Source of the DNA: Octopus bimaculoides
Taxonomy: Eukaryota
Length of the DNA stretch: 64,000 nucleotides
Reading direction: 5' to 3'
NCBI RefSeq assembly: GCF_001194135.2
Contig: NC_068992.1
Location: forward strand, 9,629,199-9,693,198
A program made the translations under genes and the position numbers. Each line of letters starts with the position of its first letter. Position 1 is the stretch's first letter. This document shows positions 54,591 through 56,295 of the stretch, piece by piece. Below the pieces are notes generated by a model that was not told the DNA's origin, did no database searches, and worked only from the letters and a program-made list of their open reading frames with translations.

Positions 54591-55136
54591 AAACAATTGA
54601 TATGCTGTACGAAAGTGAAGTTCGCTGAACAAAGAGAACAAAGTAATTAAAGCTTAACGGAATTCACCTTTAAGGACAGATATACACAGCACACATATTC
54701 TTTTAGATAGCTGTAACTAAGAAATTCCACCTTTCTCTCACTGTACTGTCGTCAGTGTCATAACTTAAATATTCTGGACGATCTAAATCATGCAGTGTAT
54801 TGCCCTGCGAAAATTGTATATTTGACGTTTCCTGTCAACTTGCTGAATTCAAGGACTAAGCTAATTTTAAAATGCCATCACTAAAACAAGGTTTTCCTAA
54901 GAAACGTCATTTGCTTATATTCTAATTTTATGAATAAAATTCAATTAAATTATTTTGTTCTTTTGGAAGTTTTCCAAAGTTCTATAAGTACATTATGGAT
55001 ATTCAAAGATCTCCTTCTAATCTGCATTCGGTCTCGTACTTAAGCATTGCTATATTTTGCGAATGCTGCAAGGCAATATCCTACACTTTATCGTGCAGTT
55101 ACTGTTAATACTTCATTTAGAGAATTAACATTGCTT

Positions 55137-55416
55137 GTTTTCACCTTTTCGATATCAGTGAAGAATTTCACTGGAAAAGAAGATATAAGATTGCCAGGTT
55201 TTTGTCTCTCTCACCAAGGTCAGCAGCTGTCGGACGCCGACGAAGGGAAATAACCCTGAAATCCGGATACGTTCGTGCTGCAGATCGAGGTGAGAGGGAT
55301 AACTTCCCTTGGCAAACAGGACACAGTCGTGTGTCGATAAGCCAGCTGGAGGAGATGTCCTCCTGGGGCTAAAAGCAACAGTAACATCCACCCCTAGGGG
55401 TCAGCCACACTTAAGT
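55137..55416 (+). mobile_element. Retrozyme-like 280-bp non-autonomous insertion flanked by 65-bp direct repeats
   Basis: Direct repeats at 55072-55136 and 55417-55481 (1 mismatch); internal hammerhead and several hairpins; no ORF. Confidence 0.75.
55221..55280 (+). ncRNA. Type I hammerhead ribozyme (U4C core variant) with extended, bulged stem I
   Basis: CGGACG-CCGACGA-AGGG(AAAUAA)CCCU-GAA-AUCCGGAU-A^CGUUCG. Stem I has 6 bp, then CAGCA/UGCUG beyond a 5-nt bulge. Predicted cleavage after A55269. Confidence 0.75.
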
Positions 55417-56295
55417 GGCAATATACTACACTTTATCGTGCAGTTACTGTTAATACTTCATTTAGAGAATTAACATTGCTTATTAATAANNNNNNNNNNN
55501 NNNNNNNNNNNNNNNNNNNNNNNNNNNNNNNNNNNNNNNNNNNNNNNNNNNNNNNNNNNNNNNNNNNNNNNNNNNNNNNNNNNNNNNNNNNNNNNNNNNN
55601 NNNNNNNNNNNNNNNNNNNNNNNNNNNNNNNNNNNNNNNNNNNNNNNNNNNNNNNNNNNNNNNNNNNNNNNNNNNNNNNNNNNNNNNNNNNNNNNNNNNN
55701 NNNNNNNNNNNNNNNNNNNNNNNNNNNNNNNNNNNNNNNNNNNNNNNNNNNNNNNNNNNNNNNNNNNNNNNNNNAGGCAATATCCTACACTTTATCGTGC
55801 AGTTACTGTTAATACTTCATTTAGAGAATTAACATTGCTTATTAATAAACTGTTTCATTTCTTGTTGCCTCTTTCTCAATATTCATATACTAACTTGAAT
55901 CTGTCTGTTGAATTTCGAGCACATTCCTACATTACTTTTTTACTTTATTGCATTTTGGTAACTTGTTTCAAAAACGATAATCTACTCTCCCAATTTTGTA
56001 CTCTCTAATTTCATCATTTCTGTCGCGTTCCTCTTTCCTCTATTCCGTAAGCACTCTTCTCCATCTTTCTCCAGTCATTGCTAAGCATTGCTCAAATGGA
56101 TTTGGGGCCAAAATGAAAATCATCGAAAATAAGAATGCTAAATTAAAGATAAATTTCTCTGTAGAAACATGTACACCTTTTAATATTTTTATCGTACCTT
56201 TTAGTTTGCTTTCTGTTTTTTTATTGTTTTCTGTTTACGTTAGGCAACGATCGATTGCTTTCTCTGTAAGGTCAATAAATATCTCTCTCTCGCCA

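What the first reader, a model, noticed from the sequence alone, without database searches (positions are those of the whole stretch)
55072..55481. Retrozyme-like 280-bp element with a fully folded type I hammerhead between 65-bp direct repeats
Seen: a 280-bp ORF-less insert (55137-55416) between two 65-bp direct repeats. It contains every hammerhead element in order: stem I CGGACG/CGUUCG, core CCGACGA, stem II AGGG/CCCU, GAA, palindromic helix III AUCCGGAU, and a UA cleavage site. Stem I continues as a long rod: CAGCA/UGCUG, UCUCUCUCACC/GGUGAGAGGGA and UUGCCAG/UUGGCAA. Further hairpins are CAGUGAA/UUCACUG, GACACA/UGUGUC and GGAGGA/UCCUCC. Known: metazoan non-LTR retrozymes are roughly 170-400-nt non-autonomous retroelements with type I hammerheads that can yield circular RNAs. 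Inference: this is a cephalopod retrozyme or ribozyme-SINE family. The ribozyme lies mid-element rather than at an end, as expected if the copy was reverse-transcribed from a circular or multimeric RNA.
Basis: partly seen in the sequence, partly recalled or inferred. Interest (0 to 1): 0.82.

Follow-up and report, generated by a model that had tools for sequence, protein, structure and literature searches.

The report
Hammerhead-bearing retrozyme-like repeat in octopus
A 280-base, strongly folding, non-coding insert in octopus DNA has the exact layout of the self-cleaving hammerhead ribozymes of animal "retrozyme" repeats, but one normally invariant core base is changed, so it is probably a dead copy of a known kind of mobile element.

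Summary
The sequence is as described, with two caveats.

Evidence for a hammerhead:
- The motif at 55231-55275 (+) has a 6-bp helix I, a 4-bp helix II with a 6-nt loop, GAA, the 8-nt palindrome AUCCGGAU and A17. This is the published architecture of metazoan type I hammerheads.
- It lines up part for part with four experimentally cleaving retrozyme ribozymes.
- A descriptor for this architecture, allowing one core mismatch, hits only this site in the window and nothing in 80 Mb of random sequence.
- A covariance model built from the four known ribozymes ranks it first in the window.

Evidence against: that model's score is weak (12.1 bits; E 0.44 window-wide, 0.003 within the element). Rfam's hammerhead models find nothing.

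The insert has 49% GC against 35% in the flanks. It folds far better than shuffles (z about -6) and matches no protein, plasmid, phage or E. coli sequence.

Best reading (about 0.6): a retrozyme-type, hammerhead-bearing retroelement copy in an octopus genome, probably catalytically impaired. The assembly cannot separate a collapsed tandem dimer (345-bp unit) from a single insertion with a 65-bp target duplication. Copy number could not be tested.

The parts
55072..55136 (+). 65-bp direct repeat, copy 1 (C at repeat position 8). Either a target-site duplication or part of a 345-bp tandem unit.
   Evidence: GC is 32%, like the host flanks and unlike the insert.
55137..55416 (+). 280-nt non-coding, highly self-paired element body.
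   Evidence: GC 49% against 35% in the flanks. Linear MFE -106.7 kcal/mol, z -5.6. Circular MFE -103.2, z -6.3. 8 G.U pairs on + against 4 on -. No protein homologue in six frames. No match in plasmids, phages or E. coli.
55191..55315 (+). Long imperfect hairpin (rod) whose tip is the hammerhead-like domain.
   Evidence: Helices listed: 55191-98/55308-15, 55202-15/55289-302, 55218-21/55283-86, 55223-27/55277-81, 55231-36/55270-75.
55231..55275 (+). Type I hammerhead-like motif. Helix I 55231-36/55270-75. Core CCGACGA 55237-43 (C4 at 55238). Helix II 55244-47/55254-57 with loop AAAUAA 55248-53. GAA 55258-60. Palindromic helix III AUCCGGAU 55261-68. H17 = A55269, with predicted cleavage after 55269.
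   Evidence: Only hit of my descriptors in the window. Top hit of covariance model R1, built from four validated retrozyme hammerheads: full length, all 12 pairs standard, 12.1 bits, E 0.44 in the window and 0.0028 in the element. No Rfam hit.
55155..55174 (+). Side hairpin UCAGUGAA/UUCACUGG.
55320..55363 (+). Two side hairpins, GACACA/UGUGUC and GGAGGA/UCCUCC.
55417..55481 (+). 65-bp direct repeat, copy 2 (A at repeat position 8). It is followed by ATTAATAA (55482-89), which is identical to the start of the downstream flank.
55490..55774 (.). Assembly gap of 285 N. The distance from the end of copy 2 to the start of copy 3 is 294 nt, against 280 nt between copies 1 and 2.
   Evidence: Four other gaps in the window are the minimal 10 N, so 285 looks like a positive size estimate.
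55776..55840 (+). 65-bp direct repeat, copy 3 (C at position 8, preceded by 'a' at 55775). With that base it is 66/66 identical to 55071-55136. It continues into the downstream flank.

Best explanation
The segment is a copy of a small, non-coding, highly self-paired retroelement of the metazoan non-LTR retrozyme type, lying in AT-rich, repeat-rich octopus DNA.

**Shown**
- The motif has the canonical metazoan type I hammerhead layout: helix I 6 bp, helix II 4 bp with a 6-nt loop, GAA, and a 2-bp helix III capped by a palindromic CCGG loop (together an 8-nt palindrome), with A17.
- It sits at the tip of a long rod, on the strand that folds better.

**Inferred life cycle, taken from the known family**
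1. Tandem copies are transcribed.
2. Two neighbouring hammerheads pair through the palindromic helix III and cut after position 17.
3. [quoted passage not shown]
4. The circle is reverse-transcribed and integrated by target-primed reverse transcription, using an autonomous Penelope-like or LINE enzyme.

**This copy**
- It carries C instead of the near-invariant U4 (CCGACGA). It is therefore predicted to cleave poorly or not at all, that is, to be a decayed or dead-on-arrival copy.
- One C-to-T change at a CpG would restore the consensus.

**Local architecture: two forms I cannot separate**
- (A) A tandem array of at least two 345-bp units (65-bp R plus 280 bp), collapsed by the assembler so that the second body lies in the 285-N gap.
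- (B) A single 280-bp insertion flanked by a 65-bp target-site duplication. The contig after the gap would then be the empty allele of a heterozygous site.
For: **Architecture of the motif**
- Metazoan canonical type I hammerheads are defined as helix I 6 bp, helix II 4 bp, and helix III 1-2 bp capped by a 2-4 nt palindromic loop, working as dimers (PMC4209133). The motif matches all of this.
- It aligns part for part with four cleaving retrozyme hammerheads from the supplement of PMC7229834. Mussel has the 8-nt palindrome ACGCGCGU. Axolotl Ax353 has the 8-nt palindrome ACACGUGU and A17.
- It passes that paper's GAAAY (GAAAU) and RUH (AUA) filters.

**Statistics**
- It is the only hit in 128 kb (both strands) for the one-mismatch descriptor.
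- The canonical-architecture descriptor gave 0 hits in 80 Mb of random sequence.
- 18 chance co-occurrences of CTGANGA-N14-GAAATCCGGATA in metagenomes have no helices: helix I at most 3 bp, helix II at most 1 bp.
- Model R1, built without the candidate, ranks it first in the window. It matches all 44 model positions with 12/12 standard pairs. E = 0.0028 within 55072-55481.

**Element properties**
- GC is 49% against 35% in the flanks.
- Fold z-scores are -5.6 to -6.7.
- The + strand is favoured by 12 kcal/mol and by 8 versus 4 G.U pairs.
- A dimer cofold forms the intermolecular helix III, -52.9 kcal/mol against 2 x -23.6.
- There is no coding signal and no contaminant match.

**Architecture of the locus**
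- Size (280 or 345 nt) and GC below 50% fit the 150-450 bp, low-GC retrozyme repeats (PMC7229834).
- For form A: start-to-start spacings are 345 and 359. The 285-N gap is close to the 280-nt body. Minimal gaps in this assembly are 10 N.
- For form B: R has host-like GC. Copy 3 joins the upstream 'a' to the downstream flank. Long and variable duplications are normal for LINE and PLE integration (PMC8557442; PMC9977147).
Against: - U4 is C. In a comprehensive mutational scan, all single mutants of the CUGA U-turn had low activity (PMC9901934).
- The published filters for real motifs require CUGANGA, so a defining feature of the hammerhead is not met.
- Rfam 15 hammerhead models give nothing, even at E <= 10 on a 63-nt slice.
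- My own model's score is low (12.1 bits) and not significant window-wide (E 0.44).
- The strict descriptor was written after the candidate was seen, although from a published definition.
- No second copy lies in the window. None was found in metagenome, viral or prokaryote collections. No spurious-ORF relatives appear among 5.8 billion proteins.
- There is therefore no evidence of a family and no covariation.
- There is no sequence similarity to known retrozymes outside the ribozyme layout.
- The tandem organisation that defines retrozymes is only inferred from a gap size.
Confidence: 0.6

Rival explanations
1. The insert is a 5'-truncated copy of an autonomous Penelope-like element. It would be only the 3'-terminal (pLTR) portion with its hammerhead, inserted by target-primed reverse transcription, rather than a separate non-autonomous retrozyme.
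For: - PLEs carry type I hammerheads in their pLTRs, near their 3' ends.
- PLE insertions are often very short because of 5' truncation, with a median of 128 bp in one direct study, and they give variable-length duplications.
- PLEs occur in cephalopods.
- Retrozymes appear to derive from pLTRs (bioRxiv 10.64898/2026.07.22.740005).
- The insert has no poly(A) tail.
Against: - Metazoan PLE hammerheads are mostly 'minimal': helix II 7-8 bp, helix I 4-5 bp, no helix III. This motif has the canonical 6/4/short-palindrome form that the same authors assign to retrozyme repeats.
- The cephalopod PLEs named are Naiads, which lack canonical hammerheads.
- No RT or GIY-YIG coding remnant adjoins the insert.
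Confidence: 0.15
2. The hammerhead resemblance is coincidental. The insert would be some other structured repeat or retrocopy (an unclassified SINE, a hairpin-forming element or an ncRNA pseudogene) whose long hairpin happens to hold a near-core.
For: - The core fails at U4.
- Rfam finds nothing.
- R1 scores only 12.1 bits, E 0.44 window-wide, and the next random hits score 9.8 bits.
- A loose descriptor is expected 0.08-0.46 times per window.
- A long hairpin supplies helix I for free.
Against: - The literature-defined architecture gave 0 hits in 80 Mb of random sequence.
- The motif meets GAAAY, RUH, the 6-bp/4-bp helix sizes, the 6-nt loop 2, an internal loop right after the 6-bp helix I, and an 8-nt palindromic helix III like those of mussel and axolotl.
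- Chance core co-occurrences in metagenomes have no helices.
- No known ncRNA family matches the insert, and it holds no tRNA.
Confidence: 0.15
3. The repeat-insert-repeat layout is an assembly artefact. A short-read graph may have been mis-threaded through a 65-bp repeat, or two haplotypes may have been laid in series. In that case neither a 65-bp target duplication nor a tandem array is real at this locus. The 280-bp element would still exist somewhere in the genome.
For: - The window is a gap-rich draft with 18 N runs.
- This is the only gap flanked by non-simple duplicated sequence.
- Copy 3 is a 'recombinant' of copy 1's left context and copy 2's right context.
- The two contig ends overlap by 73 nt with one mismatch, yet were not merged.
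Against: - The junctions R/insert (55136/55137) and insert/R (55416/55417) both lie inside one gap-free contig.
- The flanks are unique in the window.
- The 285-N estimate equals one more unit, which has a simple biological reading.
Confidence: 0.1

Closest known systems
Mytilus galloprovincialis non-LTR retrozyme (construct Mg353) and its type I hammerhead (Cervera & de la Pena 2020, PMC7229834)
   Same: - The host is also a mollusc.
- The repeat is about 350 bp, low in GC, non-coding and highly self-paired.
- Its hammerhead is GCGUCA|CUGAUGA|GUCU-UUUGU-AGAC|GAA|ACGCGCGU|C|UGGCGU. That gives a 6-bp helix I with a G.U pair, a 4-bp helix II, an 8-nt palindromic helix III, and a position internal to the unit.
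   Different: - There is no primary sequence similarity outside the layout.
- Mussel has the consensus CUGAUGA and C17. The octopus has CCGACGA and A17.
- Mussel copies number about 5000 in tandem arrays and are expressed as circRNAs. Copy number, arrays and expression are unknown here.
Axolotl retrozyme Rtz353 / HHR_Amex2 (PMC7229834)
   Same: - Helix III is an 8-nt palindrome (ACACGUGU) and A is at position 17.
- Helix II is weakened at its base.
- It cleaves poorly as a monomer and well as a dimer.
- Unit size is about 350 bp.
   Different: - The host is a vertebrate.
- The core is the consensus CUGAUGA.
- It has about 60,000 copies.
Schistosoma mansoni Sm-alpha hammerhead (N79 derivative, sequence in PMC12550524)
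   Same: Helix I is 6 bp and is followed by an internal loop and a closing stem. Helix II is 4 bp with a 6-nt A-rich loop: CAAAUA, against AAAUAA here.
   Different: N79 has an engineered long helix III and the consensus core.
Minimal hammerheads of Penelope-like element pLTRs (Cervera & de la Pena 2014, PMC4209133)
   Same: They are type I, act as dimers, are tied to a retroelement that integrates with variable duplications, and have low activity in vitro.
   Different: In metazoan min-HHRs helix II is 7-8 bp, helix I is 4-5 bp and helix III is absent. Here the layout is 6/4/2 bp with a palindromic loop.

Membership tests
Hammerhead ribozyme, type I | Three helices around a junction, with helix I open (type I order: I-5', core, II hairpin, GAA, III hairpin, H17, I-3') | tested here: met
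   Helix I 6 bp, helix II 4 bp, helix III 2 bp plus a CCGG loop. The R1 alignment shows 12/12 standard pairs.
Hammerhead ribozyme, type I | Conserved core CUGANGA (C3 U4 G5 A6 N7 G8 A9) | tested here: not met
   The sequence is CCGACGA at 55237-43, so U4 is C. Mutants of the CUGA turn have low activity (PMC9901934).
Hammerhead ribozyme, type I | Conserved GAAAY and RUH (G12 A13 A14, the A15.1-U16.1 pair, H17 not G) | tested here: met
   GAAAU at 55258-62 and AUA at 55267-69. The criteria are from the PMC7229834 supplement.
Hammerhead ribozyme, type I | Match to curated covariance models (Rfam hammerhead families) at the gathering score | tested here: not met
   There were 0 hits at gathering on the whole window. 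No hammerhead hit appeared at E <= 10 on 490 nt or on 63 nt.
Hammerhead ribozyme, type I | Match to a model built from validated retrozyme hammerheads | tested here: inconclusive
   R1 (4 seeds) ranks the motif first in the window, but at 12.1 bits and E 0.44. Within the 410-nt element E is 0.0028.
Hammerhead ribozyme, type I | Covariation in helices across homologues | not testable with these tools
   No second copy is available, and no eukaryotic genome collection was on hand.
Hammerhead ribozyme, type I | Site-specific self-cleavage | not testable with these tools
   This needs in vitro transcription of monomer and dimer constructs.
Metazoan non-LTR retrozyme | Canonical type I hammerhead with a short palindromic helix III (dimeric action) | tested here: inconclusive
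   The layout is met exactly. The core fails at U4.
Metazoan non-LTR retrozyme | Short head-to-tail tandem repeats, 150-450 bp unit, dimers to multimers | tested here: inconclusive
   Three R copies lie at start-to-start spacings of 345 and 359, but the second body would lie in a 285-N gap. Copy 2 is followed by flank-like ATTAATAA, not by the body.
Metazoan non-LTR retrozyme | Many copies per genome | not testable with these tools
   There is one copy in 64 kb. The host genome was not searchable.
Metazoan non-LTR retrozyme | Non-coding, no LTR/PBS/PPT, GC below 50% | tested here: met
   No homologue exists for any frame. GC is 49% for the body and 46% for the 345-nt unit. No LTR-like structure is present. 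PBS and PPT motifs were not searched for.
Metazoan non-LTR retrozyme | Highly self-paired unit-length RNA | tested here: met
   Circular MFE is -103.2 kcal/mol (280 nt, z -6.3) and -123.9 (345 nt, z -6.7), with 61-62% of bases paired.
Metazoan non-LTR retrozyme | Expression as linear and circular RNA | not testable with these tools
   No transcriptome data were available.
Penelope-like element (pLTR fragment) | Continuity with an RT plus GIY-YIG ORF, or the min-HHR layout (long helix II, no helix III) | tested here: not met
   No RT or EN remnant adjoins the insert. Helix II is 4 bp and helix III is present.
SINE (tRNA/5S/7SL-derived) | Pol III head related to a small RNA, and a tail shared with a LINE | tested here: not met
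   No tRNA was found. No Rfam family hit the insert at E <= 10. The insert has no similarity to the abundant SINE-like repeat of this window.

The most novel reading that the evidence does not exclude
The octopus carries a live retrozyme family. Under this reading the locus is a true tandem dimer of a 345-nt unit, or a polymorphic recent insertion with a 65-bp duplication. C4 would be the family's native state rather than a lesion, so a natural hammerhead with a CCGA turn would still process transcripts into circular RNAs, perhaps only as a dimer. This would be the first natural U4C hammerhead and the first evidence of ongoing retrozyme mobilisation in cephalopods.
Probability: 0.08. Interest if true: 0.65.

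Novelty: new member of a known kind. Interest (0 to 1): 0.36.

Why it matters
- Retrozymes are a ribozyme-based route to abundant small circular RNAs in animals. They have been described in cnidarians, bivalves, amphibians and several other invertebrate phyla.
- I found no report for cephalopods in the searchable literature. A confirmed octopus family would extend the host range.
- If the site is polymorphic or tandem, it would offer a locus for studying how these elements integrate: the length of the duplication and rolling-circle reverse transcription.
- The case also shows that standard Rfam scans miss near-consensus copies.
- As it stands, this is one copy with a damaged core, so the finding is useful but not surprising.

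Tried and rejected
- **Rfam.** I searched the whole window at gathering score, then 490-nt and 63-nt slices at E <= 10. No hammerhead or other family hit the insert.
- **Other copies in the window.** blastn with word size 7 found none.
- **Other copies elsewhere.**
  - A concatenated six-frame translation against 5.8 billion proteins found none.
  - The pattern CYGAYGAAGGG-N6-CCCTGAAATCCGGATA found none in metagenome, viral or prokaryote collections.
  - A looser pattern, CTGANGA-N14-GAAATCCGGATA, gave 18 metagenome loci. All lack helices and some lie in coding sequence, so I used them only as an empirical null.
- **Sampling octopus DNA.** I tried contigs that encode relatives of a neighbouring RT fragment. 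They are anonymous ENA metagenome contigs and too little sequence to be informative.
- **Contamination.** There was no match in plasmids, phages or E. coli.
- **SINE or tRNA origin.** Rejected.
- **Homology to the mussel, coral or axolotl retrozyme bodies.** None.
- **Is R part of the RNA structure?** R adds more stability than shuffled R (1st percentile) but not more than random host 65-mers (15th percentile), so this is inconclusive.
- **Second-best R1 hit at 705-751.** It has a consensus CUGAUGA...GAAA, but helix I pairs at only 4 of 6 positions and there is no fold signal (z +0.33). I judged it chance.
- **Adding the Schistosoma N79 sequence to the model.** MAFFT misaligned its long engineered helix III, so I dropped it.
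Full report
**What is in the sequence**

Reading 54700-55900 and the repeat finder show three copies of one sequence, not two.
- Copy 1 is at 55072-55136.
- Copy 2 is at 55417-55481. It is 64/65 identical to copy 1, with A instead of C at repeat position 8.
- Copy 3 is at 55776-55840 and is identical to copy 1.

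Copies 1 and 2 enclose the 280-nt body (55137-55416). Copy 2 is followed by ATTAATAA and then 285 N (55490-55774). Copy 3 is preceded by 'a', as copy 1 is. It is followed by the same ATTAATAA and then runs on into unique downstream sequence.

This is the only one of the window's 18 gaps that is flanked by duplicated non-simple sequence. The others sit in microsatellites. The flanks are unique in the window. Neither the body nor the repeat has another copy in the 64 kb.

**The host**

The window is 35% GC, full of microsatellites and gaps, with no convincing gene. A reverse-transcriptase C-terminal fragment at 42848-43105 (-) has as its best named relative an Octopus bimaculoides protein at 92% identity. 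The "cephalopod" attribution is therefore reasonable.

**The body is foreign, non-coding and structured**
- Its GC is 49%, against 35% for the flanks and 32% for the 65-bp repeat.
- Stop-free frames reach 83 aa. A concatenated six-frame query found no relative among 5.8 billion proteins.
- It matches nothing in plasmid, phage or E. coli collections, so it is not a contaminant of those kinds.
- The + strand folds to -106.7 kcal/mol (z = -5.6; none of 200 shuffles folded as well). The - strand folds to -94.5 kcal/mol (z = -3.2).
- The + fold uses 8 G.U pairs against 4 for the - strand. This points to an RNA read from the + strand.
- As a circle, the 280-nt body gives z = -6.3 and the 345-nt unit (repeat plus body) gives z = -6.7. 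About 61-62% of bases are paired.

**The hammerhead-like motif**

At 55231-55275 the order is CGGACG | CCGACGA | AGGG-AAAUAA-CCCU | GAA | AUCCGGAU | A | CGUUCG.

Cervera and de la Pena define the canonical metazoan type I hammerhead as follows: helix I of 6 bp, helix II of 4 bp, and helix III of 1-2 bp capped by a 2-4 nt palindromic loop. It is unstable as a monomer and active as a dimer between tandem copies (PMC4209133). The octopus motif fits each of these numbers.

The supplement of PMC7229834 prints four constructs that cleave in vitro.

| Source | Helix I 5' | Core | Helix II and loop | GAA | Helix III | H17 | Helix I 3' |
|---|---|---|---|---|---|---|---|
| Mussel | GCGUCA | CUGAUGA | GUCU-UUUGU-AGAC | GAA | ACGCGCGU | C | UGGCGU |
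| Coral | ACUGCA | CUGAUGA | GGCC-AGAAA-GGCC | GAA | ACAGUACUGU | C | UGCAGU |
| Axolotl 353 | ACCUCA | CUGAUGA | UGCC-CACUA-GGCU | GAA | ACACGUGU | A | UGGGGU |
| Axolotl 330 | ACCUCA | CUGAGGA | GGUC-CAAAAA-GGCC | GAA | ACAUGU | C | UGGGGU |
| Octopus | CGGACG | CCGACGA | AGGG-AAAUAA-CCCU | GAA | AUCCGGAU | A | CGUUCG |

The octopus sequence is the same object part for part. Helix III is an 8-nt palindrome, as in mussel and axolotl 353, and position 17 is A, as in axolotl 353.

That paper accepts a motif only if it shows CUGANGA / GAAAY / RUH. The octopus motif passes GAAAY (GAAAU) and RUH (AUA). It fails CUGANGA at one position, because U4 is C. Position 7 is free, so its C is allowed.

In a comprehensive mutational scan of a hammerhead, all single mutants in the CUGA U-turn had low activity (PMC9901934). 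The 10.1-11.1 pair is A-U rather than the usual G-C; that this pair is usually G-C is from my own knowledge. A cofold of two copies forms the intermolecular AUCCGGAU helix and is more stable than two monomers, -52.9 against -47.2 kcal/mol.

**Is it chance?**
- I wrote an RNAmotif-style descriptor. With the consensus core it has no hit in the window. With one core mismatch allowed, the only hit on either strand is this motif.
- In Markov-1 random sequence the loose version (helices of at least 5, 4 and 1 bp) is expected 0.46 times per 128 kb. At the observed stringency (6, 4, 2 bp) it is expected 0.08 times. Alone, this is not compelling.
- The literature-defined architecture needs helix II of 4-6 bp with a 4-8 nt loop, and a perfect 4-8 nt palindrome from A15.1 to U16.1. 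It again hits only this site and hit nothing in 80 Mb of random sequence.
- As an empirical null, 18 places in the metagenome collection carry CTGANGA-N14-GAAATCCGGATA. None has more than 1 bp of helix II or more than 3 bp of helix I.

**Covariance-model tests give a weaker picture**
- Rfam 15 finds no hammerhead at gathering score.
- It also finds none at E <= 10 on 490 nt or on a 63-nt slice.
- I built model R1 from the four validated retrozyme hammerheads, without the candidate.
- Run without filters, R1 ranks the candidate first in the window. The match covers all 44 model positions and all 12 pairs are standard.
- The score is only 12.1 bits, with E = 0.44 for the window and E = 0.0028 for the 410-nt element. 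The next hits score 9.8 bits or less.
- With four seeds, two of them near-identical, the model is strongly sequence-biased, and its E-values are rough.

I put the probability that this is a hammerhead by descent at about 0.8. I put the probability that this copy is an efficient ribozyme as it stands below about 0.15.

**What the repeats mean: two readings fit**

Reading A is a collapsed tandem array.
- The start-to-start spacings are 345 and 359.
- Copy 2's end and copy 3's start are 294 nt apart, against 280 nt between copies 1 and 2.
- Minimal gaps in this assembly are written as 10 N, and there are four of them. So 285 N is a positive size estimate, equal to one more body.
- The two contig ends overlap by 73 nt yet were not merged. 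This is expected if read pairs demanded extra sequence between them.
- Under A the unit is 345 bp (46% GC), the repeat belongs to the element, and two hammerheads 345 nt apart could act as the dimer the family needs.

Reading B is one 280-bp insertion with a 65-bp target-site duplication.
- The repeat has host-like composition.
- Copy 2 runs straight into the downstream flank.
- Copy 3 joins the upstream 'a' and copy 1's C variant to the downstream flank. That is what an empty allele would look like.
- Long and variable duplications are normal for target-primed reverse transcription by LINEs and Penelope-like elements. Values up to 126 bp and beyond are reported (PMC8557442; PMC9977147).
- Retrozyme duplications, when present, are larger than 4 bp.

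Each reading needs one wrong-branch extension by the gap closer, or heterozygosity, and I cannot choose between them. Whether the repeat takes part in the RNA fold is inconclusive. Under either reading the ribozyme is internal to the copied segment.

**Mechanism**

The sequence, the layout, the composition and the fold statistics are shown. The life cycle is inferred from the known family (PMC7229834).
1. Arrays are transcribed.
2. Dimeric hammerheads cleave after position 17.
3. A tRNA ligase circularises the monomer.
4. An autonomous element's enzyme, most likely a Penelope-like element, reverse-transcribes and integrates it.

Because of C4, this copy is most simply a decayed or dead-on-arrival copy. 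A single C-to-T change at the C4-G5 CpG would restore the consensus.

**Rivals**
- A 5'-truncated Penelope-like element tail is possible (0.15). The canonical rather than minimal ribozyme layout counts against it, as does the lack of any adjoining RT remnant.
- A chance look-alike in an unrelated structured repeat is possible (0.15). The U4 failure and the weak model scores allow it.
- A pure assembly artefact for the repeat layout is possible (0.1). It would not remove the element itself.

**Novelty and verdict**

Type I hammerheads and retrozymes are known across metazoans, including bivalve molluscs. I found no paper linking them to cephalopods in the searchable library.

This is best called a probable new member of a known kind, from one copy whose core fails one defining position. 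I do not file it as a verified hammerhead. The family claim rests on tests I could not run: copy number, covariation, cleavage and circular RNA. Interest is moderate to low. The find is credible and tidy, and standard scans miss it, but a specialist would not be surprised.

Noticed in passing
window 48638-48828, 46510-46682, 43146-43343, 38729-38961, 52936-53170, 28921-29114, 48894-49049, 25220-25417, 60470-60689, 44071-44293 and others: A dispersed repeat of about 200-250 bp occurs at least 20 times in the 64 kb, at 72-91% identity to positions 80-330 of locus L001 (an ENA metagenome contig). It is probably the abundant octopus SINE-like family. Its translations share the motif NWYL..RPRKD..QS.PR.NLN.ER.DR. 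It is unrelated to the 280-bp insert.
   Followed up: partly
window 42848-43105 (-): A C-terminal fragment of a non-LTR reverse-transcriptase protein lies here. Its best named relative is Octopus bimaculoides A0A0L8I0U5 (92% identity), and hundreds of relatives occur in invertebrate assemblies. This identifies the host lineage.
   Followed up: partly
window 39006-39290 (+): A hAT-type transposase remnant matches Pfam DUF4371 (E 3.5e-5, below the curated cut-off).
   Followed up: no
window 705-751 (+): This is the second-best hit of my retrozyme-hammerhead model (9.8 bits). It has a consensus CUGAUGA...GAAA and a 4-bp helix II (GCAC/GUGC). Helix I pairs at only 4 of 6 positions and the region shows no fold signal (z +0.33). 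I judged it a chance match.
   Followed up: yes
window, 18 N runs (e.g. 7731-7740, 8398-8407, 36624-36633, 46774-46783 = 10 N each; 11039-11966 = 928 N; 20782-21760 = 979 N): Almost all gaps abut microsatellites. Four are the minimal 10 N, presumably unsized or negative gaps. This is a short-read draft assembly, which matters for any structural claim here.
   Followed up: partly
window 55096-55104 and 55379-55387: The 65-bp repeat contains GTTACTGTT, which is perfectly complementary to AACAGTAAC in the 3' part of the 280-bp body. About 0.06 such 9-mer matches are expected by chance. This would favour the repeat being part of the RNA unit, but the fold test was inconclusive.
   Followed up: partly
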